From Octopus sinensis (Eukaryota): a DNA stretch of 64,000 nt. Each line of letters starts with the position of its first letter. The first letter of the stretch is position 1. Below are positions 2,848-31,439 of this stretch, piece after piece. The notes under the pieces were generated by a model. That model was not told where the DNA came from. It did no database searches and worked only from the letters and a program-made list of their open reading frames with translations. Location of the stretch: contig NC_043014.1 of assembly GCF_006345805.1 (NCBI RefSeq), forward strand, positions 6,634,001 to 6,698,000, read 5' to 3'. The position numbers were made by a program, and so were the translations under genes.

Positions 2848-2926
2848 CAGCCATAAGAAAACGTTCTACAGCCGCCTGGAAATTTTCCACTTGCTTAGAG
2901 CTGTTGCTTTGTAATCCAGAGTGAAT
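2848..2926 (-). CDS. Formin-like gene exon (FH2): [26 protein letters not shown]
   Basis: tcttcacag| acceptor, GCTG|gtaagc donor, 79 nt, phase 0-1; aligns with SSKEHxQPFKExMExF. Remaining exons were not found in the window. Confidence 0.78.
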
Positions 2927-5900
2927 CTGTGAAGAGAGAAACAAGAAGGGTTTATATTCATGAGTTCAAGGGTAATTTTGATGTTCTTTGAGACCCATCA
3001 TCCCCCATGTTAAACGTTGAAATTGAAACCGTTGCTGTTCGAGTTGAAATTTTATAAACCAATTACTGGAGAGGAAGACCCATATGGGATGGATATAAGT
3101 GAATGTGTCAAGAGGGGCTAAATTGATGAAATATGTCGTAATTAGTTCAAAGGATAGTTCATGAAAGAATTCTGGAAATTAAATTGCAATGAAGAAAAGG
3201 GAAGTTTCAAGCCTTTGTCATTTATTCGAGAGAGAGAGAGAAGAAAGAAAGAAAGCGGTATTGTTTTGGTTATAGGCTTTCTCTTCCAGAGAGACAGAGA
3301 CACAGACACAGAGAGGGAGAGGGAGAGAGAGAGAGACAGATAGACAGAGACAGAGAGAGAAACAGACAGAGACACAGGGAAAGAGAGAAAAAGAGAGAGA
3401 GGGAGAGGGAGAGAAGGAAAGAGAGTAAGACAGACGGACAGACAGGCAGACAGACAGACAGATAGACAGAAAGATAGATAGACAGACAGATAGATAGATA
3501 GATAGACAGACATACAGAAAGATAGACAGACAGACAGACAGATAGATAGATAGACATATAGATAGACAGACATACGAAAGATAGATAGATAGATAGACAG
3601 ACGGACAGACAGACATACAGATAGATAGATAGATAGACAGACAGAGACAGAAATAGAGAGAGAGAGAGAGAGAACTAGGCATAGGTAGGAATTATTTGGT
3701 AAGGATAATGGAAGGAAATATCTTAAGAATGCAACGCTTTGCGGGAACTGGAGCTAACATGATGATAATCTTCAAGTGAGAGATGCTTTCGTTGTATGAT
3801 GTCCCTTGTACACGGTGAACAGGACATTAAGAAACATGCATTCATATTGGTCAACAGATTGTTGATGGTTTATTGTCAGTCACATGAATATGCAAAGTAG
3901 ATACGCTTCGGACACGTTCTAATTGCACTGTAAGCAGACTCTCTGTAAAAACACATATTGGGTACAATCTGGGTAGTTTGTAGCATATTGACGAACAACG
4001 TGGATGCAGTAACATTTTAGAAACGAATGGGACCCGTGTCTGAACGTGTCAAAGTGCTGTCATCTGCCTGTTGGCTCTCCTCCTGCAACTCAACTTGATT
4101 TCGAGCCGGGTCGTCAGCTGCTGGAGAGGACCGATCAGGTAAAGGACCTGGGTATCTTGGTGGATTCCTCCTTTTCGCCTTCGGCCCAGTGCGTCCATGT
4201 TGCCAACAGCACGCGGAGTTCTGTTCTTGATTCGACGGTCATTCGGAATGCTCACAGCAGCCATATTCCTACCGCTCTATGTCACGCTGGTGAGACCCAT
4301 ATTGGAGTACGGGATTCAAGCCTCTTCTCCTTATCTCTTCAAAGACATACATCATCTCGAAAGAGTCCAGAAGCTGGCTACCCGCATGGTTCTTGGTCTC
4401 AAGCATTTGTCTTATAAAGAAAGGCTGAAGACGCTCGACCTTTATTGTCTAGAAAAACGATGCCGTTGTGATCTCATTCTTGCTCACAACATCATAAGCG
4501 GAAAGTGTAACCTCTCGAAAGAGCTGTTCTTCACTCCTGCTCCAGAGCGTCGGCTGCGGGGTCATTCCGAAAAGCTCTATCTGCGATGATTTCATCTCAA
4601 TCGAAGGAGAGGGGCTTTCTCCGTCCGGGTTGCGGATCCGTGGAATAAGCTGCCGGACGAGATAGTGAAGATGCCGACGACCGCTTGGTTCAAAGTCTCC
4701 CTTGACCACAAAAGGCCTGAACTCTTTACATGAACACCACCCTGCACATAACTCCATGTCCCCCTACATGGCCTTGCTTTTTGCTTTTTGAGCCAAAAAA
4801 TTAACTAACTAACTAACTAAGATGCTACGTAGATGCATTGTAAGTATAAGGTAACGAGTAATTAGAATGGAGAGAAAGACACATACCTTGTTGCGCATGT
4901 TAATGAGTTCGTTTTTCCATGAATAAAGACTTTTTGTCATATCATCGAAAGATACCTGAAGGCAGAAAACACATACATACAAATATAGAAACAATAAAAA
5001 CATACACACATACATGCAAATACGCACACTAAATGCACATAGTATGCACGCTACTCGAAAAAAGGCCGACAGAAATTTCTAAAAAATTCCATTATTGCCA
5101 TATTGGACTGATTTCAGGGTTAGTTCAAAAAGAACCCTCCTTTCGTCAGTGATGCCCATTCAAGACACGTGCGATTTTTAGCATATTTGGCATTAGAAAT
5201 TTTTTCGTTTGCCCTATAGATAGATAGTGCCACATAAAAAGCACTGGTCCTGGGGCCACATAAAAAGCACTGGTCCTGGGGCTACATAAAAAGTCACTGT
5301 TGTTGGTGCCACGTAAACGTATCCAGTACTCTGTAAAGTGGTTGGCGTTAGGAAGGGCATCTCGCTGTAGAAGCCAAGCCAAAACAGACTAAGGACCCTG
5401 GTGTGGTCCCTGGCCTTACCAGCTTTTGTCAAGCCGTCCACCACCGTCATCATCATCATCATCATCATCATTACCATCTTCATTGAATGTCCAGCATGGA
5501 AAACGGACGTTAAATGATGATGATGATGATGATGATAATGAACAGAATGGATATGAGGGTAGGAACTTACCTGAGATGCCTGCCGAAGCATAGCTGGGTT
5601 GGGAAATGGAAATGCTTTCATTGAATAGAAATCAGGTGTGTTTTCGTACGTCTGGCAGTAGACCATTATTATGTGTTCTAATAAATTTCTTTTGTTAAAC
5701 TGCAGAAAAAGAAAAAAACAGACCAAAATAAGTAGTATTTAGTTTTATTAGTATAAAGAGTATGGTTGTTTTCCAAACAATTCATTTAAATATTATATTT
5801 AAATCAACAACTTGTGGCTGTGTGGTAAGTAGCTTGCTAACCAACCACATGGTTCCAGGTTCAGTCCCACTGCGTGGCATCTTGGGAAAGTGTCTTCTGC

Positions 5901-6722: not shown

Positions 6723-6764
<42 letters not shown>

Positions 6765-9700
6765 CGACAGGCTTCTTTCAGTTTCCATCTACCAAATCCA
6801 CTCACAAGGCATTGGTCGGCCCGGGGCTATAGCAGAAGACACTTGCCCAAGATGCCACGCAGTGGGACTGAACCCGGAACCATGTGGTTGGTTAGCAAGC
6901 TACTTACCACACAGCCACTCCTGCGCCTATGTATATATATACACACATATATTCCACAGGCTTCTTTCAGTTTCCGTCTACCAAATCCACTCACAAGGCA
7001 CTGGTTGGCCCGGGGCTATAGCAGAAGACACTTGCCCAAGATGCCACGCAGTGGGACTGAACCCGGAACCATGTGGTTGGTTAGCAAGCTACTTACCACA
7101 CAGCCACTCCTGCGCCTATGTTTGTTTGTTTTTTTTGTTGATTTTGTTTTGTTTCTTTTTTTCTTACTTGGTATTCTATCATCATTGAAAAGGGGTAGAA
7201 ATTTATCCAAATTTCAAAAACGATAAACAGAACGATAAAAGAAAACAATTAAGCAAAATTAAAGAAATAAAGAAATATTTTTCGCGTTAATTCAAATAAC
7301 ATCAGAAAGGATTAAGATGTGTGGGGAAAAAAAAATACGAATGAATTTATCTGACAACCCAACATCAGTCAATTAAAAGATGTGTACGCCAAATTCACAC
7401 AGATGGGAGACGATGCACGTTTTATTTGCATAAAGATGGAATCACAATTTAATCACAAAGAAAAAAAAAACGGAGTGGCTGTGTGGTAAGTAGCTTGCTT
7501 ACCAACCACATGGTTCCGGGTTCAGTCCCACTGCGTGGCACCTTGGGCAAGTGTCTTCTACTATAGCCCCGGGCCGACCAATGCCTTGTGCGTAGATTTG
7601 GTAGACGGAAACTGAAAGAAGCTCATCGTATATATGTATATATATATATGTGCGTGTGTGTTTGTGTGTCTGTGTTTGTCCCCCTAGCATTGCTTGACAA
7701 CCGATGCGGGTGTGTTTATGTCCCCGTCACTTAGCGGTTCGGCAAAAGAGACCGATAGAATAAGTACTGGGCTTACAAAGAATAAGTCCCGGGGTCGAGT
7801 TGCTCGATCAAAGGTGGTGCTGCAGCATGGCCGCGGTCAAATGACTGAAAACAAGTAAAAAAAAAAAAAAAGATTAAACAGCAGACGGAGATGTGGGGGC
7901 AAGACACTCCAGAACAAATGGCCATCGTACATAGGCAACTCGCTGGGCCTCTGTAAAATAATCTTACTCGGACCAAAGTCTTGTTGAAGAGGTTTCCAGA
8001 TGCGGATTTAATGGCTTCATGAGACACGAAAGGAATTAGAAAGTCTAACCGATCCCCTTATAAGAAATACATACGCTAGTTTGGTTACTCGTGAAATGAT
8101 GAGGTTTGATTGATCGCCGACATAAATATCTTCACCTCTCGCCTGGCCCCCGTACCGGTGACACGTAAAAGCACCATCCGTTCATGGCCGTTTGCCAGCT
8201 CTGTCTGACACCTGTGCAGGTGGCACGTAAAAAGCACCCACTACACTCACGGAGTGGTTGGCGTTAGGAAGGGCATCCAGCTGTAGAAACATTGCCAGAT
8301 AAGACTGGAGCCTGGTGCAGCCTCCTGGCTTCCCAGACCCCAGTTGAACCGTCCAACCCATGCTAGCATGGAAAACGGACGCTAAATGATGATGATGATG
8401 ATGATGATGATATTGAATTCTTGCTTCGTAAAGTTTTGCTGTAGAATTTTGCTTCCGTCATGGAAGTGTCATACGTCGCTAAAATATTTGGCGAGGTGTC
8501 AGCTGGAATATATTTGGCGAAGAAAGTTTGGTGGTTCGTGTAAGTACGAATTTGCATAAGTTATCCAATAAGTATTTAGAATAAACTTCTTATGGAAACA
8601 CGTGTAGGGATACCCTGAAATTTCAATTCATTTTATTCTTATTTACTCTGTGTGTGTGTGTATGTGTGTGTGTCTGTGTGTGTGTGTGTGTGTGTTTCCC
8701 CCCACACCACCGCTTGATAACCGGTGTTGATGGCGGCGAGCTGGCAGAAACGTTAGTGCGCCGGGCGAAATGCGTAGCCGTTTTTCGTCTGTCGTTATGT
8801 TCCGAGTTCAAATTCCGCCGAGGTCGACTTTGCCTTTCATCTTCTCGAGGTTGATTAAATAAGTACCAGTTACGCACTGGGGTCGATATAATCGACTTAA
8901 TCCGTTTGTCAGTCCTTGTTTGTCCCCTCTATGTTTAGCCCCTTGTGGGTAGTAAAGAAATAGGTGTAGATTTGTTTACATGCTCGTAACTTAGTGGTTC
9001 GGTAAATGGCCCCGATAAAAAAAATGTACCTGGCTACTAATTAATAAGAACAAGAAGGGATTTCTTCAGCTAAACACTTTAAGACGGTTACTCCAGCATG
9101 GCCGCAGTCCAATGACTGAAACAAGTAAATAAGTAAATGACAAAAGATAAATGATAAAAGATGAAAGGTCTTTTATTTCTGACTTACTTTTGCGAAAATG
9201 TCTTTGAGATTTGGAAGAATGTCTAACAGGAAGCCGTTTGCTTGACCGAGACAAGAACCTCGGTTGAGATAGTTTCCAACGCTTACAATGGCACTCAGAA
9301 GATTCTTCAATGGTAAACTGAAACAGACAATGGGAATAGACGAATGGTTAATACAAATGCAAGAATAAACAGCTCCAAGAATTTCAGTAACATTTCTAAA
9401 ATAAACAAGAATTTTGAAAGATCTACTGAAATCACTCAAACGCATTTTATTTACTGGTAGGTTTTTTGTTGGGGTTTGGGTTGTCTTCTGCTATAGCCTC
9501 GGGCCGACCAAAGTCTTGTGAGTGGATTTGGTAGATGAAAACTGAAAGAAGCCTGTCGTATATATGTATATATCTGTGTGTGTGTCTGTGTTTGTCCTCC
9601 CAACATCGCTTGACAACTGATGTTGATGTGTTTACATCCCCGTAACTTAGCGGTTCCGCAAAAGAGTCCGATAGAATAAGTACTCGGCTTACAAAGAATA

Positions 9701-11325
9701 TGTCCTGGGGTTGATTTGCTTGACTAAAGGCGGTGCTCCAGCATGGCCGCAGTCAAATGACTAAAACAAGTAAAAGAATAAACGAGTAATTGAAACTGAT
9801 TAAATATTTTGTTGTCCCTGTACATACATACTCCTAGCTAGACTTATCCTATGAAAGTTTAGTGTTTTCGACCACGGACACAATGCGTTGATTGGTGGAG
9901 CATGCGAATTGTTGGTCCCTTGGTCCGTTCGTGGGTACCGAACTCTGTGAGACATACTAATTGTAAGTCCACTGGATATTACTGTCCCGAGACTGAGGAC
10001 TCATAGGTCCGGTTACCTGATTTCAAAGATGCATAAGTAAACAAGATCACAACATACCCGCTAAACGAGGCACCCGTCCGTCGCAGGGGACAACCATTTA
10101 GAGCTGAGTGGAACGGGACTGTAGCAATGTGAAACGAAATGTTTTGCTCACGAACAGGCGCAGGAGTGGCTGTGTGGTAAGTAGCTTGCTAACCAACCAC
10201 ATGGTTCCGGGTTCAGTCCCACTGCACGGCATCTTGGGCAAGTGTCTTCTGCTATAGCCCCGGGTCGACCAATGCCTTGTGAATGAATTTGGTAGACGGA
10301 AACTGAAAGAAGCCTGTCGTATATATGTATATATTTGTGTGTGTGTGTGTGTTTGTGTGTCTGTGTTTGTCCCCCTAGCATTGCTTGACAACCGATGCTG
10401 GTGTGTTTACGTCCCCGTCACTTAGCGGTTCGGCAAAAGAGGCCGATAGAATAAGTACTGGGCTTACAAAGAATAAGTCCCGGGGTCGATTTGCTCGACT
10501 AAAGGCGGTGCTCCAGCATGGCCGCAGTCAAATGACTGAAACAAGTAGAAGAAAAAAAAAGAAAGAAAAAGAACACGACTTTGTGGGTCGAAACCACGAT
10601 TCTGCAACCGTGAACGCGACGCTCTAACCACTAGACCGCGCGCAGTCACCAAGCAAATACCCTCTCTTTAGAAATGAGACAGTTCTTATAGTTTCTCAAT
10701 CGTTTTCTTTAAATATAGACCAAAAACGGTTTAGAAGAAATGTTATTTAGTCTCATACCTGTTGTATAATTCATCACATGCTGCGTGGACGGCTCGCAGG
10801 CGTTGGTCTGGAAAAGAAAGGATCAATCGTAAAATAGTCGAATGTGATTGATATAATAATTTGTTTTTAATTGAGGAACACGAACAACACCTTTGAGGAC
10901 AAGCGATGAATCAATATAATCGACCCTGGGATATGACTGGTAGTATATTTTAGCGACGTCGAAAGGATAAATAGCAATGATGATCAGGGTGGGATTTGAA
11001 CCTGAAGAGACGGAGTGACATGAGTATTTTTGCTCTAAGTACTGATGATTTCGCAAACTCGCCGCCTTATTGTTGACAAACCCATGCATGGTAACACACA
11101 CACACACACACACAAACACATATATACCCACACAAATGTATATTGACATGCATGCAGACACATATACATACACATACATACATACATACACACAAAAATA
11201 CCCTGTTGTTGATGTTGAAATTCCAGTGAAGGAACCTTGGATCTAGGTTAGAAACCGGTTCTTTCTCAATTGGCAAGAAATCTTGAAATAAACTGAATAA
11301 TGACATACATACATACATACATACA

Positions 11326-11896: not shown

Positions 11897-12354
11897 CATA
11901 CATACATAGATATACATACATACATACGTACATACACACTTACAAACATATACAGATGCATGAACGGTGGAGATCCTATAAGAAAACAATAATTGTAAAT
12001 AACTATAACAACAATAACAACAACAACAACAGTAACAGTGAGTCGTGAAGGCCACATACGAACCTGTTTCAAACATTTCTGCCAGTAGTCTTAGCTTGAA
12101 GCGAAGAAAGTCTAACCGTTCCCGTAACAATTCCATACTTGAAAGTTCCGACATGAGGTAATCCGAGCAGTTGATTGGTGCTGAAATAAATAGCATTGTT
12201 TTAAAGTTATCTCTGTGGATATTCTGTAGAATTTAGAGCCTGCACAGAAAGTTACGATGGTTCGTATGCGAATATCTCTCAATGTAAACAATGCGATCGA
12301 AGATAGAAAAATTAGATAATGAGTGTATATGAATATTTCACGAGTATACATGTA

Positions 12355-15485: not shown

Positions 15486-15800
15486 TTCAGTTACATATAT
15501 AGATATCGCCGCATTATCATTATATATGTGAGCGTGCGTGTGTGTCCGCGTGTATGTATGTATATGTACATGTAAGAGACAAGGAGAGAGAGCAACTGTT
15601 TGTATTGTCCAGTTTGCATAAAGAATGAAATTACCTGATAGGATTTGCGAACCGTAGGGTCTCTATTGATAGGGTCAACAAAGCTTGGACTATGTCCCCA
15701 TAGGTACACTTGATTTGTTTCATGTGTAGGACCATTTCTTGATTCTTCACCGGATCCAAGGTTGAGCTCAACTGTAAGATTAATAAATATATGGACAGTG

Positions 15801-22132: not shown

Positions 22133-25100
22133 GATTATGGTGATGATGATGATGATTATGGTGATGATGGTGGTGGTGATGATGATTATGGTGATGATGG
22201 TGGTGGTGGTAGTGGTGGTGGTTGTGATGATGATGATGATGATAATGGTGATGATGACGATGATGACGATGATGATGATGGTGATGATGATGATGATGAT
22301 GGTGATGATGGTGATGATGGTGGTGGTGATGATGATTATGGTGATGGTGATGATGGTGATGATGGTGGTGGTGATGATGATTATGGTGATGATGGTGGTG
22401 GTGATGATGATGATGATGATGGTGATGATGGTGATGATGACATTTGAACGCACATAGCGGTGCCCTATGCATGGTCACAACTTAAGTTAATCTTGAAATA
22501 ACCTTCCTGCAGGGTGCATTGTGATATTGGCTCATAAAGTCCTTTAAAGGACCAGGCAGGAGTCAAATATACAGTTATGGCTTCACAGCCCGGGGCCCTC
22601 GGTATGGAGCCAAGGCAGTAAGAGTAGGACATGTTATGAAGTCATGGTATAGACAGACTTGAAGGCGGCGAGCTGGCAGAAACGTTAGCACGCCGGGCGA
22701 AATGCTTTGCGGTATTTCGTCTGCCGTTACGTTCTGAGTTCAAATTCCGCCGAGGTCGACTTTGCCTTTCATCCTTTCTGGGTCGATAAATAAAGTAATA
22801 AATAAATAAAACATATGCATATATACATACATATATGTACGTACCCACATTTACATGTATATATACATGCATATATGGTACCAGTTACGCACTGGGGTCG
22901 ATATAATCGACTTAATCCCTTTGTCTGTCCTTGTTTCTCCTCTGTGTTTAGCCCCTTGTGGGTAGTAAAGAAATAGTTATTTCGTCTGCCGCTACGTTCT
23001 GAGTTCAAATTCCGCCGAGGTCGACTTTGCCTTTCATCCTTCCGGGGTTGATAAATTAAGTACCAGTTACGCACTGGGGTCGATTTAATCAACTTAATCC
23101 GTTTGTCTGTCCTTGTTTGTCCCCTCTGTGTTTAGCCCCTTGTGGGTAGTAAAAAATAGATATATACAGACTCACCTTGCAGTGCATGTCGCATGGCAGT
23201 ATTTTGTAAGTGCATCGACGGATGTTGCTGCAGCTGCAGCTGTTGTTGTTGTTGTTGTTGCTGCTGCTGCTGCTGCTGAAGAGCTTTCCCCGGAAGTACT
23301 CCGTAGGTAACAGATTTGTTACTCGAGTTCTCCAGCATCTCGGCAATGTTGTGCAGCTCATGCATTTTCGTCATGAGTTTACTGATTCGATCCTCATAAG
23401 TCCGCAGCACGCGCTGGTGTTCCCTCTTCATCCGGTTCATCTCCTCCATCAGCTGCTTCTCGTTGTCCGAATACGAAGAACAGGGGTCAGCACATCCCCA
23501 ATTTTTCATCCCACTCTGACTTTGGTTGCCGTTCATAACAGCCTCGAAACAGCTGTTACCAATATTTTTGTTGTTGTTGTTGTTGTTGTGATCGTTGTTT
23601 TTACTGTGGTGAGGATTGTGGGGATGGTGGGGATGGTTTGTGAAAGCAGTGGTGGTGGTGGTGGTTGTGGTGGTAGTAGCGGTGGTGGTAGTATTTGCGT
23701 TGGCGATCGTGGTGTTAGCATGAATGCTGTGGTTGTTGCAAATGTTATGTTTTTTGTAAGCCGTTAACTCACAATCATCGACACAGGCACGGAATACCTG
23801 AAATAAATAAATAAATAAATAAAAGAAGAAAAGGAAGAACAACAACAACAAGTACAAGAAGAAGAACAACAACAAGTACAAGAAGAAGAACAACAACAAG
23901 TACAAGAAGAAGAACAAGTACAAGAAGAAGAACAACAACAAGAAGTACAAGAAGAACAAGAAGAACAAGAAGAAGGAGAAGAAGAAGAAAAAGAAGAAGC
24001 ACAAGAAGAAGGAGAAGGAGGAGGAGGAGAAGAAGAAAAAGAAGAAGCACAAGAAGAAGGAGAAGGAGGAGGAGGAGAAGAAGAAGAAGAAGAAGCACAA
24101 GAAGAAGAAGAAGCACAAGAAGAAGAAGAAGAAGAAGAAGAAGAAGAAGAAGAAGCACAAGAAGAAGAAGAAGAAGAAGAAAAAGAAGAAGAAGAAGAAG
24201 AAGAAGAACAACAACAACAACAACAACACCATCAACAACATTAATAATAATCCATTCTACTAAAGGCACAAGGCCAGAAATTTGGGGGAGGGGTATAGTT
24301 GATTGCATTGACCCAAGTGCATAACTGGTATTTATTTTATTGACCCCGAGAGGATGAAAGGCAAAGTCGACTTTCACGGAGTTTGAACTTAAAGATGGAC
24401 CAAATACCTATTTCTTTATTACCCACAAGGGGCTAAACACAGAGGGGACGAACAAGGACAAACATAGGTATTAAGTCGATTACATCGACCCCAGTTCGTA
24501 ACTGGTATTTAATTTATCGACCCCAAAAGGATGAAAGGCAAAGTTGACCTCGGCGGAATTTGAACTCACAACGTAACGCAGACGAAATACCGCTAATCAT
24601 TTCGCCCAGCTTGCTAACGTTTCTGCCAGCTCGCCATCTTTTCATGGCTTCTAATCTTAACTGATTGGAAGTGTTATTATGTACATTGTTTTGTCTTGGT
24701 ATAAAAGATGGGCTACAGCAAATATTCTGCTCAATACCACAGACTTGCTTGTCAGTTGTTTGACCTTAACCAGTTGATTATGTCCCTTGGTGACTGACAA
24801 TATTCAACACCCAAAAGGTCCGGTCTAAAAGTAGAAACGGTGGAACTGATCCTCGCTGCACAAGATTAATGTGTTAATAATGTTATCACAAGCACAAAGA
24901 CATACTCTTTCTTTTCCATTTCTCTTCTGCAGCTACTTCGATGGCCGCTGCTCTTCGAGACTAACAAGCTACTTAACATAATAATAAAATCTAGGAAAGG
25001 ATGAAGACAAACCAACGTACGGAAAAGAGGAAAAATCTCACAATCAATGTGGACACAGTCAACCCCCAATATCATTTATCAACCAGAAATTATTACAGTT

Positions 25101-28100
25101 TCACCACTTTTCGACAATATTGTTTAATTTGGAAATGAGCCGATATGAAAGACGAACACGAACAAGACAATAAGACAACTGCAAAAAGAAACGAGGTTTC
25201 CTGGCAGAACGGTAAAACGGATGAGTTATGAAGAGATTGGGAAAATATAAAAGCAAGGACAGTAACAAAAATATATATGAAATAAATGACCCAAGAATTT
25301 GCATAAAGAGATAACCTTCACCCAAGCATCCATTCCTTGGTGCACGCCAGTTTCTCTTTAACTCATGCGATAACCCCTGCAAGTATTAAAGTATGCATAC
25401 CCAGAAATGCAAACTTCTGTAACCTACATTATGTCTATGTTGTAGCTGGTATTTAATTCCAGGTCAACACTGATCGACCAGGTCTTTAATCAAAAGCACT
25501 CCATTCGTGACCATCCAGACTTTTACAATATATTCTTTTTTTAAGATATTACCGTATGATTTGAAGATATTTTCTCTAAAATTCGTTTTTTTTTTGTGCC
25601 AAAATTGGAAACCAATATACTCTTTACTCTTTTACTCTTTTACTTGTTTCAGTCATTTGACTGCGGCCATGCTGGAGCACCACCTTTAGTCGAGCAAATC
25701 GACCCCGGGACTTATTCTTTGTAAGCCCAGTACTAATTCTATCGGTCTCTTTTTGCCGAACCGCTAAGTGACAGGGACATAAACACACCAGCATTGGTTG
25801 TCAAGCGATGGTGGTGGGGACAAATACAGACACACAAACACAGACACACACATACATATATACATACATATACATATATATGACAGGCTTCTTTCAGTTT
25901 CCGTCTACCAAATCCACTCACAAGGCATTGGTCGGCCCGAGGCTATATAGCAGAAGACACTTGCCCAAGATGCCACACAGTGGGACTGAACCCGGAACCA
26001 TGTGGTTGATAAGCAAGCTACTTAACAGACAGCCACTCCTGCGCCTACCTTGACATAAAATTGGAAACAAATTGAAGATATAGAAAGATAGTCAATAAAC
26101 ATACAATAAACATATCTGGAAGATATAGAAAGATAATCAATAGACATACGGTGAAGTTTGCGTATTCTGCTACACTTAATTTAACGGATACTATAGCGGT
26201 TATAAAACTGGACACAAATATAGCACAACATAAAAAACATGCATTAATATATGTATGTGTGTGTACCCCTCTCACTCATTCGTTTCTTGTTATCCCTCTT
26301 TCTCTCTCACACAACTCCATATAGTACAGTCTCGTGTATTTCTAAACATTATGGAAGAAGCAACATACCTGCGTCTCCAAATTTTTTGGCATTTCTTGTG
26401 GGATTTTCATTGGTGTGTTATAATCCAATGGAAATAAATGTTTCTCGGATAAATATTTGTCTGTTTTAACACCGCTGTCCATTTTAATAGAATTTGTCGT
26501 GCAACGGTCTTTGAGTTTCACTCTTAAAGGATAATGAGTTGTGTGTGTTGCTTTCAGCTTAGTCGAATGTTGTATATCTTTGGTATGCTGTACGGAAATA
26601 CTTTTTGGATTAGACAGAATATTCGATGGAAAACCTTGATGATTGAATAAAAGAAGGATTTTTTTTCAAAATAAACAAAAAATAAACAATTCGGAAATAT
26701 TAAAATACAAAAGGAATAATATCGATGGGTTTACTCTTTTACGCTTTTACTTGTTTCAGTCATTTGACTGTGGCCATGCTGGAGCACCGCCTTTAGTCGA
26801 GCAACTCGACCCCGGACTTATTCTTTTTGTAAGCCCAGTACTTATTCTATATTCTATCTCTCTTTCCGAACCGCTAAGTGACGGGGACGTAATCACACCA
26901 GCATCGGTTGTCAAGCAATGCTAGGGGGACAAACACAGACACACAAACATATACACACACACTTATATATATATACATGTATACGACAGGCTTCTTTCAG
27001 TTTCCGTCTACCAAATCCACTCACAAGGCATTGGTCGGCCCGGGGCTATAGCAGAAGACACTTGCCCAAGATGCCACGCAGTGGGACTGAACCGGGAACC
27101 ATGTGGTTGGTTAGCAAGCTACTTACCACACAGCCACTCCTGCGCCTTTTGTTGTTTATTTCTCTTTAGTTTATATTTTGTTGTTGTGTGAAAGCCCATG
27201 GTCTCGTGGTTGCACTTGCCACCGCAAGATCGTGGTACGAGACTAGAAAAGATGACCTAATCATGTATTTGAGCGACTTGGCACAAGCTAAAGTTCTAGA
27301 AGGAATCTACATCTTACACTGCATCAATAAGGAGTTCCCAGAAATGAGGATTGATCACTATAGAGACGGGCTCTGTTTACATTTTAAAAAAGTAATAACG
27401 TAGTATTAAAATTAATTAGGAAACATTTTTTATTTTTTATTTTTAGAAATTTAAGATTTTCTACCTCCTTAGAACAAGACTTCAAAGCAGCAAAATTTCT
27501 GCATGTAGCATCGGACCTCACTGAAGCTTGGTATTAGATTTTATCATCCGAACCATAAACCCAATGAAAATCTCAAATACATCAATAAAAAATCCAATTA
27601 TCCAAGAGCTGTGATTAAATCCATAGCTACTAGTATTCCTGTTAAAATATATAGACTATCAGCTAATGAAGAGATTTTCTAACAGAATGAGAAATATATC
27701 TCTTTTGAGATATAATATTAACACTGAATGAATAAATTAGAACTCTTATGACTGAGTACCTAACAGAGTATGTAACTGTGAAACCATGACAAATGCCTGT
27801 TGGATAACCATTGCCTAAGGAATAATCTGATATACATGTACTCGGTCAAAACACCTGAGTGTGATTGTTATGATATATTTGCTGTTGCTTCAAAATCCAG
27901 GACCAGATTATATAACTACATTAATTATTCAAATACAAAAAAAGAAAGCTCCACTTTGTTGGTTAAATTTATCTGGACCTCAAAAGGGGAGAAGATAGAC
28001 TACTCTATTTTGTGGTCTATTATAGCTAGTCCTATTCATTACTGAGGATGCAATGAATACTGTAATGTATGATCAGCGGGGGCACTGGAAATGCTTTATT

Positions 28101-31100
28101 GTAAATGTAATTAAAAATTTAAGGACTTATTAATCCACTGTTCTCACTTACTGAGAAAAACATTTGTAAAATGTTTTGCTCATACATAATTAACTCATAC
28201 ATAATTAACCTCATACATAATTAACTTACATAAGTATAAATAAGATTAATGCTTACAATCTCTTAATATAGATTCTCCCTCCTTCTTTATTTATATATAA
28301 TATACTAAATACTCCTTTCGAAACTAATTTTTAATCTTTATCTAATATTCAACAATTGCACATAATTTAATACATATAAGAGGGTACATAAATTTACATA
28401 GTTAAATATATATATATTATATATATATATACTCTTTTACTCTTTTACTCTTTTACATGTTTCAGTTATTTGACTGCGGCCATGCTGGAGCACCGCCTTT
28501 AGTCGAGCAAATCGACCCCGGGACTTATTCTTTGTAAGCCCAGTACTTATTTCTATCGTCTCTTTTGCCGAACCGCTAAGTGACGGGGACGTAAACACAC
28601 AAGCCATCGGCTGTCAAGCATGCTAGGGGGACAAACACAGACACACAAACACACACCATACATATATATATCTATATACATATATACGACAGGCTTCTTT
28701 CAGTTTCCGTCTACCAAATCCACTCACAAGGCATTGGTCAGCCCTGGGCTATAGCAGAAGACACTTGCCCAAGATGCCACGCAGTGGAACTGAACCCGGA
28801 ACCTAGTGGTTGGTTAGCAAGCTACTTACCACACAGCCACTTCTGCGCCTAACTGAATTTCTTTTTAATTTTGTTAACCTAATATTTACTGAACTGACTT
28901 ATAAATTTACACACATTTATTGCATACTCAGTTGAACTTTCCTCTATTCTCTCTTTTACAAGAGACTTTAAAATATCACCCTTATAAAGATTGGGCAGCT
29001 AAAAAATATATTGTGTAGTTGTTTCCCTCTGTTCTGTTCTCACGGATTAACACGCTCCTAAACTTGTTGGCATTTTGACCTCACAGGACTGTAAACTTGG
29101 CAAGAATATCTTTATATATAAAAATTAGTTGTGTATCTGTCTCCTACATTTAGATTCCTAACTACTCCACATTTTGTGGTTCAGTTTAACCAAAAGCAAG
29201 TACCTTATAGTCGTGATTCATATCGAGCCCTTCTGAGTATTAGCGCGCGTCTACGATAAGTCTACAATTTTAAAAAAAATCTACCATAATTTTTCCGCAT
29301 TTTTAATGCATTTTCGCTCGGTTTATATAAGGGAAGTAACTCTCTAAAAATGTATTATTAAATCTCAGAACGTAAAAAGCTACAGTAACACCCCCCCCCC
29401 CTTTGTGGTTAGCCATACTGAGATGGCTATTATACTTTACATCTCTAAAAATGCTTATATAATTATTTCCCTTACAAACCCGAGCAACGCCGGGCGATAC
29501 TGCTAGTGATAAATAAAAGAGGGTAATTTGATACGACAGTTATCCACAGTCCACCTTCACAACTATCTTTTCTAGGAAACTTTGGAAATCTATCACAACA
29601 ATTTTAAGGTATGAAGAGAAAGGATGAGGACTAATTATTTTGTTAATTAATTGATTGATTGATTATGCATACAAACTATTGTGCTCTGAGGAGACAGTTT
29701 CACTTGCTATTTGAAACATTCGTAACATTGAATAAAGTTATGTAATAGCGTAATCTTTATTTACTTGTCTTATTGGTCTGTGTGTGTGTATGTGTGTGTG
29801 GTACATGCATACATACGAGGTCTGATCAATAAGTATCCGGACTGTTGTCATGGTAACGAAGCTAAAGCACGCAGAGTAAAGCCGCTCAGTAAAACTTGAC
29901 CTCTGTTGTGCATGCACACTAAGTTTTAACATTCTAACTCACTTCCCCTGTTTACAGCAGTGCTAGGAAGGAATGTGTGTAGCGTTGATCGTCGCATGGA
30001 CCATGACAGAGGAAGCTGTCATGGCGAAACCGGCTCAGAGGCTTACACAAAGTTGCAGAAAGTGTATGGAGAGGAGTGTATGGAGAGAAATGTATGGAGA
30101 GGAGTGTATGAGCGGTACACAAGTGTACGGGTGGTTCAGACGTTCCCAAGATGGCCGAAAAAATGCCGATATTGACGATCGTTCTGGGAGACCAGCAGCC
30201 AGGAGAACAGAGAAGAAATATCGCAGATGTATGTGCAGCTGTGAGAGAAAATCATCGAATCACCAACCGTGAGATATCAGAGGATGTACAGATTAGTTAC
30301 GGTTCAACTCAGTCCATGATCACTGAAGATTTGGGTATGAGACGCGTGTCTGCCAAGTTTGTGCCAACACTGCTTTCAGCTGACCAAGAAGACCCTCGGG
30401 TTTCAGTTGCACAAGATCACCCTGATTGTGTCGAGAACGATGAAAACCTTTTTGGAAACTTTGTGTAGGCCTCTGAGCAGGTATCACCAAGCTTTTGGCA
30501 AAATTCGATGCAGATTCTCTGCTCTACTTTCTCCGTTATGGTCAATGCAACGAGCACACGCTACACACCTTCCTTCCAAGCACTGCTGTAAATAGTGGAA
30601 GTGAGCTGGAACGTCAAAACTTAGTGTGCATGCACAGCAGCGTTCAAGATCAATCTGTGCCAAGCGGTTTTACTCTGCATACTTTAACTTCGTTACTATG
30701 GCAACAGTCCGGATACTTATTGATCAGACCACATACACATGTGTGTGCGCATGTGTCAGTGTGCGTGCATGTGTCCGTGTATTTGTGTGTGTGTGTATTT
30801 GTGTGTGTGTGTATGTGTGTGTGTGTGTATGTGTGTATGTGTGTGTGTGTGTGTGTGTGTGTAGCTAAGGGAATTGTAAATATTTCAAAGAAATTTGTGT
30901 TTTACCTGAATATGCTTGGTGTGTGGGTCTCCACAGCTATCAGTGGGTGAATTCGAACTTGAAACCCCTCCGATGCTTAGTAATTTATTCCGAACGTCTT
31001 CGACGAACTGAGCGTTAACATTCATTCGATTGTCCGAAGGGGTCTGTAGGTTTCTGCTATATTGATTGTCTGTGTTCTGAGACGTTGTCGACCGAGAATA

Positions 31101-31439
31101 CGCTGGATGATTCTTGGTCATCCCTTTATTAAACCGAGCTCGGGATCTACACTGGAAACATACTGAGCATCCACGGCAATTCCGATTTGTGTTGGAGACC
31201 CGTTCGATATCCTCACCATTGTGCCAGGTATAAAGCTGCACTGAATCTTCAAAGTTACAGGCACCGAAAATGCTCCTGACAAGGCCCAGCCTAAAAAGAC
31301 GGCGTGCAAAATCCAACGCAACTGCACGCGTGGCAAAACGTTGATCGCCGATATCCAGAAGAGCAGACACTAACGCTGATCCTTTGAATATTTTGGATTT
31401 ATTTTCAGTTTCGTTTGAAGGGGAACTCGTCGAAAAAGC
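2848..31439 (-). CDS. Multi-exon gene (partial at both ends): DEP domain + coiled coil + minimal FH1 + divergent FH2, FMN/cappuccino-like formin-related protein
   Basis: 13 GT-AG exons joined by hand with matching intron phases: 31439-30906, 23797-23176, 20067-19876, 18427-18355, 17450-17360, 15771-15635, 13175-13096, 12180-12064, 10807-10759, 9317-9188, 5699-5571, 4955-4887, 2926-2848. The spliced frame is open throughout and gives FH2 motifs in canonical order ([64 protein letters not shown]). Confidence 0.88.
3290..3676. repeat. (GA)n/(GACA/GATA)n compound microsatellite; a similar tract lies at 16730-17020
   Basis: Seen directly. Confidence 0.92.
3995..4820 (+). pseudogene. CR1/L2-group LINE 3' fragment (frameshifted RT C-terminus, (TAAC)n tail)
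   Basis: [57 protein letters not shown] across frameshifts; tail taactaactaactaa. Confidence 0.88.
4887..4955 (-). CDS. Formin-like gene exon (FH2): [23 protein letters not shown]
   Basis: gccttcag| acceptor, AAG|gtatgt donor, 69 nt, phase 0-0; aligns with xxFEDxxKDLRKLKKDL. Confidence 0.82.
5225..5537 (+). mobile_element. RTE 3' UTR fragment with 23-nt tandem repeats and internal (CAT)n
   Basis: Tail homology; ends 34 nt from the donor of the formin exon at 5571. Confidence 0.7.
5571..5699 (-). CDS. Formin-like gene exon (FH2): [43 protein letters not shown]
   Basis: ttctgcag| acceptor, CAG|gtaagt donor, 129 nt, phase 0-0; resembles recalled FMN SLLSYIVSYY...FPLPEPQDLFQASQ. Confidence 0.88.
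6513..7117 (-). mobile_element. SINE family A, minus-strand tandem pair
   Basis: Reverse complement of family A. Other minus copies at approx. 20335-20680, 25620-26046, 26730-27146, 28432-28850, 31605-32038, 35470-35640, 58545-58955, 60540-60712. Confidence 0.85.
8145..8411 (+). mobile_element. RTE 3' UTR fragment
   Basis: Tail homology and (ATG)n end. Confidence 0.8.
8732..8964 (+). mobile_element. tRNA-derived SINE family B monomer (representative)
   Basis: Head ggcggcgagctggcagaaacgttag...gagttcaaattcc, body gtcgactttgcctttcatcc...aagtaccag, tail gggtagtaaagaaatag. Other copies at 32369-32599, 39327-39548, 61065-61245, and minus 40602-40800, 54720-54905. Confidence 0.88.
9188..9317 (-). 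CDS. Formin-like gene exon (FH2 post): [43 protein letters not shown]
   Basis: tgtttcag| acceptor, AAA|gtaagt donor, 130 nt, phase 2-0. Contains the GNYxN post motif and is close to the recalled FMN motif GQADGFGLDILPKLKDVKS. Confidence 0.92.
10157..10550 (+). mobile_element. tRNA-derived SINE family A (representative copy)
   Basis: Head ggcgcaggagtggctgtgtggtaag...ggttcagtccc, CORE-like ttgggcaagt, central (TA)n(TG)n, tail gactgaaacaagtaaaagag. Other plus copies at approx. 5815-6212, 7474-7860, 9480-9780, 33958-34390, 37766-38390 (tandem), 43062-43495, 47009-47430, 59231-60480 (three in tandem), 61495-61760. Confidence 0.88.
10759..10807 (-). CDS. Formin-like gene exon (FH2): [17 protein letters not shown]
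   Basis: tcttttccag| acceptor, ACAG|gtatga donor, 49 nt, phase 1-2; matches LxxVxxACxELxxS. Confidence 0.82.
11416..11740 (-). mobile_element. RTE 3' UTR fragment
   Basis: Reverse complement of the same tail, starting at (CAT)n. Confidence 0.8.
12064..12180 (-). CDS. Formin-like gene exon (FH2): [38 protein letters not shown]
   Basis: ttatttcag| acceptor, ACAG|gttcgt donor (phase 1, required by the next exon), 117 nt; matches FLxELSxIPxxxERLxxxxF. Confidence 0.82.
12470..12835 (+). mobile_element. Probable Penelope-like element terminal fragment
   Basis: Two gaagagc..ctcgaaac motifs in tandem; related copies at 36015-36120, 37050-37260 (minus), 42455-42545 (minus), 42850-43035. Confidence 0.4.
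13096..13175 (-). CDS. Formin-like gene exon (FH2): [27 protein letters not shown]
   Basis: ttttgcag| acceptor, ATT|gtaagt donor, 80 nt, phase 2-1; exactly bridges the phases of both neighbours. Confidence 0.75.
13270..13715. mobile_element. MITE-like element with 26-bp perfect inverted termini
   Basis: gagccagtcctgatttgattagactt / aagtctaatcaaatcaggactggctc; no clear target duplication. Lies ~95 nt upstream of the formin exon acceptor at 13175. Confidence 0.6.
15065..15442 (+). mobile_element. Non-autonomous Helitron (different 5' body, same 3' end)
   Basis: Ends aacccgagcaacgccaggcaatactgCTAG|t; the 5' boundary is approximate. Confidence 0.68.
15635..15771 (-). CDS. Formin-like gene exon (FH2 knob): [45 protein letters not shown]
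   Basis: tcttacag| acceptor, TCAG|gtaatt donor, 137 nt, phase 0-2; aligns by eye with LLDxKRSQxVGIxxxxL..DIxxAxxxL. Confidence 0.8.
16016..16160. repeat. Palindromic element (~55-nt arms); a second small inverted repeat follows at 16218-16368
   Basis: aaccaaggctgtgtagatattaga / tctaatatctacacagccttggtt. Confidence 0.75.
17360..17450 (-). CDS. Formin-like gene exon (FH2 linker): [30 protein letters not shown]
   Basis: tatatag| acceptor, CAT|gtaagt donor, 91 nt, phase 2-0; completes ELDRLFEK. Confidence 0.8.
17732..18307. repeat. ~576-bp foldback element (imperfect ~270-nt arms)
   Basis: acaatttcgagttaactaaacactttaaaacttcgtatactggtagaatgtgt mirrored at 18255-18307; internal arms gctgcgtctaaaactgagaca / tgtctcagttttagacgcagc. 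Confidence 0.85.
18355..18427 (-). CDS. Formin-like gene exon (FH2 lasso): [25 protein letters not shown]
   Basis: poly-T tgcag| acceptor, ATAG|gtaact donor, 73 nt, phase 1-2. Confidence 0.85.
19876..20067 (-). CDS. Formin-like gene exon: short FH1-like [10 protein letters not shown] and FH2 lasso start
   Basis: ctttctacag| acceptor, CCAG|gtaacg donor, 192 nt, phase 1-1. [18 protein letters not shown] resembles the FH2 start PKxKLKxLxWxKI. Confidence 0.85.
20690..20945 (-). mobile_element. 5'-truncated copy of the same CR1/L2 element
   Basis: Reverse complement of approx. 4570-4820, including the (TAAC)n tail. Confidence 0.85.
21801..22443. repeat. Compound (GAT/GGT)n trinucleotide repeat with higher-order units
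   Basis: Seen directly; source of the poly-D/H/M/I ORFs. Confidence 0.95.
23176..23797 (-). CDS. Formin-like gene exon: poly-T/poly-N/poly-Q tracts and coiled coil
   Basis: atttcag|GTATTC acceptor, CAAG|gtgagt donor, 622 nt, phase 0-1. Encodes [45 protein letters not shown] (heptad-like). Confidence 0.8.
23820..24240. repeat. (GAA/GGA/CAA)n repeat
   Basis: Seen directly; lies just upstream of the formin exon acceptor at 23797. Confidence 0.95.
29109..29506 (+). mobile_element. Non-autonomous Helitron
   Basis: A|TC...hairpin-CTAG|T; homologous to 1640-2034 with an extra ~86-nt module. Confidence 0.8.
29816..30733 (+). mobile_element. Internally deleted mariner-type element with ~170-bp inverted termini; only the N-terminal HTH region of the transposase remains
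   Basis: TA duplication; termini cgaggtctgatcaataagtatccggactgtt. Frameshifted [49 protein letters not shown] matches the mariner DNA-binding domain and WVPxxL motif. Confidence 0.88.
30906..31439 (-). CDS. Formin-like gene exon with DEP domain (approx. 31388-31224)
   Basis: tttttcag|GCT acceptor, CAG|gtaaaa donor, 534 nt, phase 0-0. [56 protein letters not shown] fits the DEP pattern FxGSxLVxxL..RxxAxxxxxxLxxxGxI..FxDSxxLYxF/W. Confidence 0.8.

What the first reader, a model, noticed from the sequence alone, without database searches (positions are those of the whole stretch)
2848..31439. DEP domain fused to an FMN-like FH2 domain: unusual formin architecture hidden in 13 small exons
Seen: 13 phase-compatible GT-AG exons splice into one open frame with a DEP-like domain, a coiled coil, one polyproline run and a nearly complete FH2. 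Established: described animal formin subtypes (DIAPH, DAAM, FMNL, FHOD, INF, FMN, GRID2IP/Delphilin, MWHF, PHCF) use GBD/DID, PDZ or PH modules; I do not recall one defined by DEP. DEP domains target membranes and receptors in Dishevelled, RGS and Epac. Inference: a receptor- or membrane-recruited FH2 scaffold, possibly linking GPCR/Wnt-type signalling to the cytoskeleton.
Basis: partly seen in the sequence, partly recalled or inferred. Interest (0 to 1): 0.82.

Follow-up and report, generated by a model that had tools for sequence, protein, structure and literature searches.

The report
Octopus formin gene with DEP domain
This is the 5' two-thirds of an octopus gene for an actin-assembling formin that starts with a truncated DEP (membrane/receptor-targeting) domain; the combination is real and conserved in molluscs, brachiopods, nemerteans and annelids, but undescribed in the papers I could search.

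Summary
The 13 minus-strand exons exist. All have canonical AG/GT sites and compatible phases, and they give 767 codons without a stop. The spliced product contains one colinear Pfam FH2 match (E=6e-41, profile 3-321/372).

The N-terminal exon is a true but truncated DEP relative. It lacks helix alpha1 and scores below Pfam's threshold. However, a family profile hits only DEP domains in the PDB (DEPTOR 1e-9), and the AlphaFold model superposes on DEP domains at 1.3-1.8 A.

The DEP + coiled-coil + short FH1 + FH2 architecture is conserved in bivalves, gastropods, Lingula, Tubulanus and Owenia. Bivalve transcripts join DEP to FH2. Pruyne 2016 filed the Lottia orthologue under the FMN subtype without noting any DEP.

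It is conserved in three other cephalopods and is spliced to the DEP exon in a cephalopod transcript. With it, O. vulgaris reads open through the first seven exons. The window does not, because its exon 1 is one A shorter (30916-30917). The 13-exon frame stays open only by skipping this exon.

Ka/Ks against O. vulgaris is 0.15. The gene runs off the window's left edge. Verdict: a real, conserved, uncharacterised formin variant of moderate interest.

The parts
30906..31439 (-). Exon 1 (534 nt; phase 0 in). It encodes the DEP-like domain plus a disordered linker and a conserved distal helix. It has no Met, so the start codon must lie in an unidentified upstream exon.
   Evidence: Acceptor TTTTTCAG|, donor CAG|GTAAAA. 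Pfam DEP 18-72/72, E=6e-5. 96.8% identical to O. vulgaris DNA. The same acceptor is used by the O. vulgaris model P0001.
31215..31397 (-). DEP-like core (exon-1 residues about 15-75): strand, helix, helix, strand, strand.
   Evidence: AlphaFold2 pLDDT 90-96. The top 20 Foldseek PDB matches are all DEP domains at rmsd 1.3-1.8 A over 56-59 residues. Family profile against PDB sequences: DEPTOR 9.6e-10, P-Rex1 1.1e-8, DVL2 6.6e-4.
30969..31013 (-). Conserved distal helix ([14 protein letters not shown] motif, exon-1 residues 143-157).
   Evidence: The 10-residue block 141-150 has mean pLDDT 90, and DSSP gives helix 143-157. The motif is conserved in P0004, P0006 and P0007.
30916..30917 (-). Single-base length difference. 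The window has AA where O. vulgaris has AAA. This puts the exon-1 donor in phase 0 instead of the conserved phase 1.
   Evidence: Alignment. The L001 donor AGACAG|GTAAGA is phase 1. For the consequences.
26369..26634 (-). It encodes '(G)[11 protein letters not shown]...[39 protein letters not shown]'.
   Evidence: Acceptor ATCAAG|GT, donor GCAG|GTATGT. tblastx to L001, E=5e-4. 5 mismatches in 266 nt against O. vulgaris, where exons 1+1b+2..6 give 637 codons without a stop. Spliced to exon 1 in transcript L004. 91% identical in a third octopod against 78-81% for the flanks.
23176..23797 (-). Exon 2 (622 nt, phase 0->1). It holds low-complexity T/N/H/Q-rich linker, the coiled-coil helix and a polyQ run.
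   Evidence: Acceptor TTATTTCAG|, donor AAG|GTGAGT. 79% aa identity to L001 and 72% to L002 in the core. Ka/Ks 0.06 against O. vulgaris.
23321..23467 (-). Coiled-coil-type helix ([49 protein letters not shown]).
   Evidence: Single helix of 49 residues, pLDDT 96-99. It is the most conserved stretch of the whole family.
19876..20067 (-). Exon 3 (192 nt, phase 1->1). It carries the FH1 with one polyproline track ([10 protein letters not shown], 20005-19976) and the start of the FH2 lasso ([12 protein letters not shown]).
   Evidence: Splice sites. 45% aa identity to L001, ending exactly at the donor.
18355..18427 (-). Exon 4 (73 nt, 1->2), FH2 lasso ([18 protein letters not shown]).
   Evidence: Identical in O. 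vulgaris.
17360..17450 (-). Exon 5 (91 nt, 2->0), FH2 linker.
   Evidence: Identical in O. vulgaris.
15635..15771 (-). Exon 6 (137 nt, 0->2), FH2 knob ([19 protein letters not shown]...).
   Evidence: 2 synonymous differences against O. vulgaris.
13096..13175 (-). Exon 7 (80 nt, 2->1), FH2.
12064..12180 (-). Exon 8 (117 nt, 1->1), FH2 ([16 protein letters not shown]).
10759..10807 (-). Exon 9 (49 nt, 1->2), FH2 ([15 protein letters not shown]).
9188..9317 (-). Exon 10 (130 nt, 2->0), FH2 post with the GNYLN...GQANGF motif.
   Evidence: Pfam FH2 E=6.5e-9 on this exon alone..
5571..5699 (-). Exon 11 (129 nt, 0->0), FH2 ([15 protein letters not shown]...).
   Evidence: Acceptor score 4.5, donor score 8.6..
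4887..4955 (-). Exon 12 (69 nt, 0->0), FH2.
2848..2926 (-). Exon 13 (79 nt, 0->1), the last FH2 exon inside the window. The donor is followed by intron. The rest of FH2 (profile 322-372) and the long tail lie beyond the window.
   Evidence: No further FH2 exon is detectable in 1-2847.

Best explanation
The region holds the first 14 identified coding exons of the octopus orthologue of a formin family found in molluscs, brachiopods, nemerteans and annelids. The start-codon exon was not found.

The family's layout is: N-terminal truncated DEP domain, disordered linker, a 50-residue coiled-coil helix, a minimal FH1 with one PPPLPPR track, an FMN-type FH2, and a long disordered tail. The FH2 C-terminus and the tail lie outside the window.

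Shown here: the exons, their splice sites and phases; FH2 and DEP homology; conservation of the architecture in four phyla; purifying selection between two octopus genomes.

Inferred from what is established for these domains: the FH2 dimer nucleates actin filaments and stays on their barbed ends. The single proline track gives at most weak profilin-actin delivery. The helix adds dimerisation or partner binding. The DEP domain places or regulates the protein at a membrane or receptor, as DEP domains do in Dishevelled, RGS7/9, Epac, P-Rex and DEPTOR.

The true exon chain is 1-1b-2-...-13. In this window the 1->1b junction is out of frame by one base. That is most simply a single-base assembly error or polymorphism at 30916-30917, but a real lesion or exon-1b skipping is not excluded.
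For: Gene model:
- Searches give the splice sites and phases. One search gives FH2 at 141 bits, colinear.
- One search shows orthologues recover the exons independently.
- One search shows no missing FH2 segments.

Family and architecture:
- One search gives 63 relatives of the DEP + coiled-coil profile.
- Searches show FH2 in all ten long relatives scanned, and a sub-threshold Pfam DEP hit in eight of them.
- Searches give the names and taxa (Potamilus, Patella, Lymnaea, Physella, Bulinus, Mactra, Mytilus, Argopecten, Magallana, Batillaria, Lingula, Tubulanus, Owenia) and show the transcript-sized Logan contigs.

FMN placement. Pruyne 2016 S1 Text and S1 Table carry Cg LOC105320770 and Lg LOTGIDRAFT_237086, the latter listed as FMN.

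DEP.

Constraint in octopus:
- Exons are 96.7-100% identical to O. vulgaris, against about 88-95% for introns.
- All splice sites of exons 1-6 are kept.
- Ka/Ks is 0.148 (20 synonymous against 11 non-synonymous differences; binomial p=4e-7).
- 26 of 30 family-invariant and 74 of 101 near-invariant residues are kept.

Exon 1b.
Against: - No octopus transcript or protein model linking DEP to FH2 was found. Searches with FH2 exons and exon 1b returned no octopus model.
- The O. vulgaris annotation splits the locus into a 195-aa 'WRKY' gene and a 1579-aa gene.
- In this window the supported 1->1b junction gives a frameshift and an early stop.
- The octopus FH2 is fast-evolving: 32-38% identity to other molluscs, against 52-55% between bivalves and gastropods. 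It has GQANGF for the family's GQADGF.
- The DEP hairpin motif RRxKDRSYxNVF is degenerate in octopus ([10 protein letters not shown]), and no start codon was found in the window.
- No biochemical function was tested.
Confidence: 0.8

Rival explanations
1. In octopus the locus makes two separate products. One is a small DEP-only protein that ends in or before exon 1b. The other is a DEP-less formin that starts at the Met inside exon 1b (MDSGVKTD...).
For: The O. vulgaris annotation has exactly this split. The 195-aa P0001 ends inside exon 1b in a shifted frame, and the next model starts at L003 34252, inside exon 1b. In the window, the 1->1b splice shifts the frame and stops within exon 1b.
Against: The O. 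vulgaris genome itself reads open through exons 1+1b+2..6 (637 codons). The cephalopod transcript L004 joins exon 1 to exon 1b in the conserved frame. All full-length relatives in four phyla are fused. Exon 1 and exon 2 are both under purifying selection. The P0001 terminal exon uses an internal acceptor and a shifted frame, which is typical of a prediction artefact.
Confidence: 0.12
2. The copy in this genome is a decaying or unitary pseudogene, and the open 13-exon frame is a coincidence of skipping exon 1b.
For: There is a frameshift relative to the conserved structure at 30916-30917. The FH2 sits on a long branch. No annotated octopus protein contains the FH2 exons.
Against: There are 14 exons without a single in-frame stop, and all 28 splice dinucleotides are intact. 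Ka/Ks is 0.15 against O. vulgaris, with exons more conserved than introns. Indels in exon 2 between the two species are all multiples of 3. There is only one 1-nt lesion, and it lies in an A run.
Confidence: 0.08
3. The N-terminal module is a generic winged-helix-like fragment and not a DEP homologue, so 'DEP-formin' is a misnomer.
For: Pfam DEP is below the gathering score in the window (23.2 against 32.7) and in every orthologue (25-31.5 bits). It was not reported at all when the whole spliced protein was scanned. Helix alpha1 of the canonical DEP fold is absent. Foldseek E-values are only about 1e-2.
Against: A profile of the family finds only DEP domains in the PDB, down to E=9.6e-10, including both DEPTOR DEPs, P-Rex1/2, DVL2, Iml1, Epac2 and GPR155. 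The alignment includes the hairpin. The 20 best structural matches are all DEP domains with probability 0.97-1.00, while bacterial winged-helix regulators appear only further down with low probability and rmsd 9-15 A.
Confidence: 0.05

Closest known systems
FMN-subtype formins (Drosophila Cappuccino, vertebrate FMN1/FMN2), specifically the second FMN subgroup of molluscs, annelids and cnidarians noted by Pruyne 2016 (PMC5047451). Its members include oyster LOC105320770 and Lottia LOTGIDRAFT_237086.
   Same: The FH2 is of FMN type. The Lottia orthologue is listed as FMN in S1 Table, and the oyster orthologue is aligned among the CAPU/FMN rows. It has the (R)GQA(D/N)GF motif after GNY(M/L)N. FH1 lies directly upstream of FH2.
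   Different: It has an N-terminal DEP domain and a conserved coiled-coil helix, which that paper does not mention. FH1 is reduced to one proline track. In the orthologues FH2 lies in the N-terminal half, followed by 800-1300 residues, instead of close to the C-terminus. Whether a Spire-binding tail exists was not tested.
Delphilin (GRID2IP)
   Same: It is also a formin whose N-terminus carries a small targeting domain (PDZ) that ties it to a membrane receptor, instead of a GBD/DID autoregulatory unit. This rests on my own knowledge and the title and abstract of PMC6004577.
   Different: The targeting domain (PDZ against DEP) and the FH2 subtype (GRID2IP against FMN) both differ.
Dishevelled-DAAM module of planar cell polarity signalling
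   Same: It brings a DEP domain and an FH2 domain together to couple a membrane receptor pathway to actin assembly (PMC7192421 abstract, and my own knowledge).
   Different: In that module DEP (Dishevelled) and FH2 (DAAM) are separate proteins that bind each other. Here they are in one polypeptide, and the FH2 is FMN-type, not DAAM-type.
DEP domains of DEPTOR, P-Rex1/2, GPR155/LYCHOS and DVL2
   Same: These are the best sequence-profile and structural matches to the N-terminal module. The hairpin strand, two helices and C-terminal beta wing superpose at 1.3-1.8 A.
   Different: The formin module starts 15-20 residues after the initiator Met and lacks helix alpha1. A conserved distal helix about 70-90 residues downstream might substitute for it, but that was not tested.

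Membership tests
Formin (FH2-domain protein) | FH2 domain above the curated Pfam threshold | tested here: met
   PF02181, 141.2 bits against a cut-off of 34.8, E=6.1e-41, one colinear stretch across 11 exons. mDia1, INF2 and DAAM1 FH2 structures match at E about 1e-12.
Formin (FH2-domain protein) | Complete FH2, including the C-terminal part of the post region | not testable with these tools
   Only profile positions 3-321 of 372 are encoded in the window. Nothing further was found in 1-2847. The gene runs off the window.
Formin (FH2-domain protein) | Proline-rich FH1 directly upstream of FH2 | tested here: met
   There is one track, [10 protein letters not shown], at 20005-19976. The same single PPPLPPR track occurs in bivalve and gastropod orthologues, and longer tracks occur in Lingula and Tubulanus.
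Formin (FH2-domain protein) | Lasso tryptophans and GN(Y/F)(M/L)N motif | tested here: met
   LPWQKV, VVWNTL and VGNYLN are present.
FMN subtype (Pruyne 2016) | FH2 groups with Capu/FMN1/FMN2 in phylogeny | tested here: met
   This is indirect. The Lottia orthologue is listed as 'FMN', and the oyster orthologue sits in the FMN block of the published alignment. The octopus FH2's best matches are this family. I built no tree of my own.
FMN subtype (Pruyne 2016) | Short C-terminal tail with a Spire-interaction sequence right after FH2 (from my own knowledge of Capu/FMN2) | not tested
   The C-terminus is outside the window. Orthologues have 800-1300 residues after FH2 with no Pfam domain. The motif was not searched for.
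DEP domain (PF00610) | Match to the Pfam model at or above the gathering score | tested here: not met
   The window scores 23.2 bits against 32.7. Orthologues score 25.3-31.5 bits.
DEP domain (PF00610) | Specific homology to known DEP domains | tested here: met
   The family profile hits only DEP-containing chains among the significant hits: DEPTOR 9.6e-10, P-Rex1 1.1e-8, P-Rex2 9e-7, DVL2 6.6e-4, Iml1 6.8e-4.
DEP domain (PF00610) | DEP fold: helix alpha1, beta-hairpin, alpha2, alpha3, beta wing | tested here: inconclusive
   The predicted core (E17-19, H20-30, H38-50, E54-56, E69-72; pLDDT 90-96) superposes on DEP domains at 1.3-1.8 A over 56-59 residues. Helix alpha1 is absent, because the family's proteins start 15-20 residues before the core. 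This rests on a prediction only.
DEP domain (PF00610) | Membrane, phospholipid or receptor binding | not testable with these tools
   This needs lipid-binding or localisation assays.

The most novel reading that the evidence does not exclude
These proteins form a distinct formin class, so far found only in spiralian phyla. It would be an offshoot of FMN in which a DEP domain is fused in cis to FH1-FH2, so that actin nucleation is recruited directly to acidic membranes or to a GPCR/Frizzled-type receptor tail. That would be a one-protein version of the Dishevelled-DAAM relay. In cephalopods it evolves fast.
Probability: 0.3. Interest if true: 0.6.

Novelty: new variant of a known kind. Interest (0 to 1): 0.45.

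Why it matters
Animal formins are usually sorted into nine subtypes by their FH2 domain and by what sits N-terminal to it (GBD/DID, PDZ, PH). A DEP-bearing FMN-type formin conserved in molluscs, brachiopods, nemerteans and annelids adds a targeting logic that the two formin phylogeny papers do not mention. It also explains the unexplored 'second FMN group' seen in molluscs and annelids. It gives a testable hypothesis: DEP-mediated membrane or receptor recruitment of actin nucleation in spiralian cells.

Practically, the work shows that octopus annotations break this gene. In O. vulgaris it is split into a 'WRKY transcription factor' and a second model. The work also pinpoints one base in this assembly that decides whether the gene reads through.

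Tried and rejected
- A search of the 5.8-billion-protein set with three joined FH2 exon peptides found nothing. So no predicted octopus protein holds these exons, and the query was too divergent for other molluscs.
- A first five-row alignment (A1) misplaced the VEDVRNKLL motif and was discarded.
- Upstream coding exon: tblastx of L001 upstream DNA against window 31.1-64 kb found nothing conserved.
- The O. vulgaris first-exon peptide MGVDKANK and last-exon peptide [12 protein letters not shown] are absent from the window even with mismatches allowed. The O. vulgaris first exon lies in DNA that is not colinear with the window.
- Remaining FH2 exons in 1-2847: neither tblastn nor a family HMM finds any.
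- Exon-1b search: the only hit was unspliced contigs of another octopod, with no annotated octopus formin model.
- The Physarum genome paper, which contains both 'DEP domain' and 'FH2', mentions them in unrelated sections.
- The taxonomy of the unnamed hits could not be resolved.
- I considered whether the minus-strand ORFs at 4.0-4.8 kb were exons. They overlap a plus-strand ORF that looks by eye like the C-terminal part of a LINE reverse transcriptase. They did not fit the FH2 chain by eye, and the 14-exon model has no missing FH2 segments.
Full report
**What the window is.** The sequence is repeat-rich animal DNA; 48% of the window matches other parts of itself. The DEP exon is 97% identical at protein level to an Octopus vulgaris model. 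The whole locus is colinear with O. vulgaris chromosome OX597833.1, with about 88-95% identity in introns and 96.7-100% in exons. So the window comes from an Octopus species close to, but not the same as, O. vulgaris. The gene in question lies on the minus strand.

**Checking the observation.** I rebuilt the gene model from scratch. I masked repeats by self-BLAST and listed stop-free minus-strand segments. I then enumerated stop-free exons bounded by scored AG and GT sites. The result is exactly 13 exons between 31439 and 2848. All have pyrimidine-rich acceptors and GT donors, and the phases are compatible throughout (0,0,1,1,2,0,2,1,1,2,0,0,0 on entry). The product is 767 codons with no stop.

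Pfam on the spliced product gives one colinear FH2 match: E=6.1e-41, 141 bits, residues 429-766 against profile positions 3-321 of 372. Solved FH2 domains of mDia1, INF2 and DAAM1 match at E about 1e-12. tblastn with full-length orthologues from a limpet, a mussel, an oyster, a brachiopod and a nemertean recovers exons 1, 2, 4, 6 and 8-12 in colinear order and nothing comparable elsewhere.

The single proline track ([10 protein letters not shown]) and the lasso ([12 protein letters not shown]...VVWNTL) are read directly from exons 3-4. The 'coiled coil' is a 49-residue uninterrupted helix with pLDDT 96-99 and a 3-4 hydrophobic spacing. It is the best-conserved stretch of the whole family.

**Is the N-terminal module a DEP domain?** On the window exon alone, Pfam DEP scores 23.2 bits (E=6e-5) over profile positions 18-72 of 72, below the gathering score of 32.7. 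The match is not reported at all when the whole low-complexity protein is scanned. Orthologues also stay just below threshold, at 25-31.5 bits.

Three further tests support homology.
- A profile of 31 family members searched against all PDB sequences hits, at E<0.05, only chains that contain DEP domains: DEPTOR (both DEPs, 9.6e-10), P-Rex1 (1.1e-8), P-Rex2, DVL2 (6.6e-4), Iml1, Epac2 and GPR155. The alignment starts in the DEP beta-hairpin (DRRHHLKTYPNCF against family sRRkkDKSYRNVFKGS).
- An AlphaFold2 model of the window exon has a confident core (residues about 15-75, pLDDT 90-96) with strand-helix-helix-strand-strand topology.
- The 20 best Foldseek matches in the PDB are all DEP domains, at 1.3-1.8 A over 56-59 residues for the best. 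Bacterial winged-helix regulators appear only lower down with low probability.

The domain is truncated, however. In most relatives the initiator Met lies only 15-20 residues before the invariant FKGS.LV..L, so helix alpha1 of the canonical fold is absent. In octopus the basic hairpin motif is degenerate ([10 protein letters not shown]). A conserved distal helix ([11 protein letters not shown]; DSSP helix 143-157, block 141-150 mean pLDDT 90) might pack in place of alpha1. That is a guess.

**Is DEP+FH2 one protein?** A profile of the DEP-like and coiled-coil parts was built from window exons plus P0004, a metagenome scaffold on which both parts lie in one open frame. It was scored against 1.84 billion representative proteins and found 63 relatives. 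All ten long ones that I scanned carry FH2 at 183-199 bits downstream of the N-terminal module, and eight of them also give the sub-threshold Pfam DEP hit.

They come from bivalves (Potamilus, Mactra, Mytilus, Argopecten, Magallana) and gastropods (Patella, Lymnaea, Physella, Bulinus). Weaker long hits come from the gastropod Batillaria, the brachiopod Lingula, the nemertean Tubulanus and the annelid Owenia. Their source names are 'formin-J-like', 'Formin 2/FMN2/Fmn2p' or 'uncharacterized protein'.

P0021 (1685 aa on a 5390-nt Logan contig) and P0019 (1583 aa on 5389 nt) leave no room for introns. They are therefore mRNAs joining DEP to FH2. So the architecture is real, conserved across at least four phyla, and already present in databases, though uncharacterised.

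**Which formin subtype?** Pruyne 2016 (PMC5047451) defines nine animal subtypes. Its supplementary FH2 alignment contains the oyster orthologue (Cg LOC105320770, identical strings VRMKALDWNR and LLAVGNYLNG) and the Lottia orthologue (LOTGIDRAFT_237086) among the Capu/FMN rows. S1 Table lists the Lottia protein as 'FMN'.

The text notes a node that splits mollusc, annelid and cnidarian FMN homologues into two groups and says this 'was not investigated further'. Neither that paper nor its 2017 sequel mentions a DEP domain. Every paper found containing 'DEP domain', 'formin' and 'FH2' or 'FH1' concerns Dishevelled's DEP acting on DAAM, or is unrelated.

**A missed exon and a one-base problem.** A contig from another cephalopod (L001) carries the DEP exon, the coiled-coil exon and the FH1 exon in the same order. 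The alignments end exactly at my splice sites. But its exon-1 donor (AGACAG|GTAAGA) is phase 1, whereas exon 2 starts in phase 0. O. vulgaris is also phase 1, because it has CCAAAG where the window has CCAAG, 11 nt before the donor.

Searching the 7-kb 'intron 1' found a conserved block. It resolves into exon 1b: window 26634-26369, 266 nt, acceptor ATCAAG|GT in phase 1, donor GCAG|GTATGT in phase 0. The supporting evidence is as follows.
- The exon is present with the same phases in L001.
- It has 5 mismatches in 266 nt against O. vulgaris.
- It is 91% identical in a third octopod whose flanks are only 78-81% identical.
- In the Logan contig L004 (SRR20545815), exon 1 is joined directly to exon 1b, with the roughly 545-nt intron of L001 removed. 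The contig also has a non-genomic 5' leader and an in-frame stop before the ATG. That is transcript evidence from a cephalopod.

With exon 1b, the O. vulgaris genome reads open through exons 1+1b+2..6 (637 codons). In the window the same chain is frameshifted and stops inside exon 1b.

The O. vulgaris annotation is broken at the same place. Its 195-aa 'WRKY transcription factor 1' ends inside exon 1b through an internal acceptor in a shifted frame. A second model of 1579 aa starts at the Met inside exon 1b.

**Is the octopus gene alive?**
- All AG/GT dinucleotides of exons 1-6 are kept in O. vulgaris.
- Exon-2 indels are 3, 9 and 15 nt.
- Exons 4 and 5 are identical between the two genomes.
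- Over exons 1-6 there are 20 synonymous and 11 non-synonymous differences (S=353, N=1267; dN/dS=0.148; binomial p=4e-7).
- The octopus protein keeps 26 of 30 family-invariant and 74 of 101 near-invariant residues. The changes at invariant sites are conservative (E->D, L->V, and D->N in GQADGF).
- Its FH2 is nevertheless fast-evolving: 32-38% identity to other molluscs, against 52-55% between bivalves and gastropods.

I therefore read the single missing A as most likely an assembly error or polymorphism. I cannot exclude a real lesion, or use of the in-frame exon-1b-skipping isoform.

**Extent of the gene.** The 3' end is outside the window. FH2 positions 322-372 and the 800-1300-residue tail seen in orthologues are not found in 1-2847.

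The 5' end is unresolved. Octopus exon 1 has no Met, unlike L001, L004 and L002, which start with Met at or near the exon's first codon. No conserved upstream coding exon was found. A head-to-head Na/Pi cotransporter gene on the plus strand from about 45.2 kb probably limits how far upstream the promoter lies, although overlapping or nested genes are not excluded.

**How it most likely works.**
- Shown: a protein with a truncated DEP, a long helix, one proline track and an FMN-type FH2.
- Inferred from established knowledge of these domains: the FH2 dimer nucleates actin and caps barbed ends processively. A single FH1 track predicts little profilin-driven acceleration. The helix supplies extra dimerisation or a docking site. 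The DEP module positions or regulates the protein at a membrane or receptor.

**Verdict.** This is a new variant of a known kind: an FMN-type formin with a cis DEP domain, found so far in four spiralian phyla, present in databases but not described in the papers I could search. Interest is moderate.

Noticed in passing
window 45215-45640 (+) and 51754-52674 (+): These are exons of a sodium/phosphate cotransporter (SLC34-like) gene, head-to-head with the formin gene. Pfam Na_Pi_cotrans gives E=3.7e-12 and 1.1e-4. The long 45215-46876 ORF runs from the exon into low-complexity intron sequence.
   Followed up: partly
L003 (O. vulgaris OX597833.1:732800-776974) 10001-34175 and 34252-44175+: The O. 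vulgaris annotation splits this formin into a 195-aa 'probable WRKY transcription factor 1' and a 1579-aa model. The break is inside exon 1b. The name 'WRKY' is clearly wrong for a DEP-like exon.
   Followed up: yes
window 23176-23290 (exon 2, polyQ) and 23600-23760 (poly-T/N/H): The low-complexity runs inside exon 2 differ in length from O. vulgaris by 3, 9 and 15 nt, always in frame. In other phyla the same position holds 'LLNIIG' without any polyQ.
   Followed up: partly
L002 (ENA ERZ23499624 METAG scaffold_32304) 161-1093: In this unidentified animal, the DEP part, the linker and the coiled coil lie in one uninterrupted frame, with a likely donor right after '...GILPGK'. In cephalopods the same region is split over three exons. 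So cephalopods, or their ancestors, gained introns here, or the other lineage lost them.
   Followed up: no
orthologues P0021, P0006, P0034 (C-terminal tails): The long tails contain a second PPPLPPR/SPPLPPR motif like the FH1 track. They end in similar short sequences (...AVMDF, ...VSYMEI, ...VSYMAV) that look like PDZ-ligand-type termini. This was seen by eye only.
   Followed up: no
window 4046-4757 (+), inside the intron between exons 12 and 13: A plus-strand ORF resembles the C-terminal part of a LINE reverse transcriptase by eye (…[17 protein letters not shown]…[11 protein letters not shown]…). Pfam gave no hit at E<=0.001.
   Followed up: partly
window 63060-63746 (-): This is a unique 229-aa ORF with a hAT-transposase-like look (…STRWNSNYISV…AAFHPKFRL…). 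Pfam gave no hit at E<=0.001, so the resemblance is unconfirmed.
   Followed up: partly
whole window, e.g. 5800-7200, 20200-21200, 25600-27200: A SINE-like element of about 400 nt recurs dozens of times in both orientations, with conceptual peptides such as [25 protein letters not shown] and [17 protein letters not shown]. Many (TA)n/(CA)n microsatellites are also present. 48% of the window matches elsewhere in the window.
   Followed up: no
window about 42180 / L003 about 20009: Colinearity with O. vulgaris stops here. The 20 kb further upstream in O. vulgaris, including its annotated first exon MGVDKANK, has only repeat matches in the window. This suggests an insertion, deletion or rearrangement between the two genomes.
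   Followed up: partly
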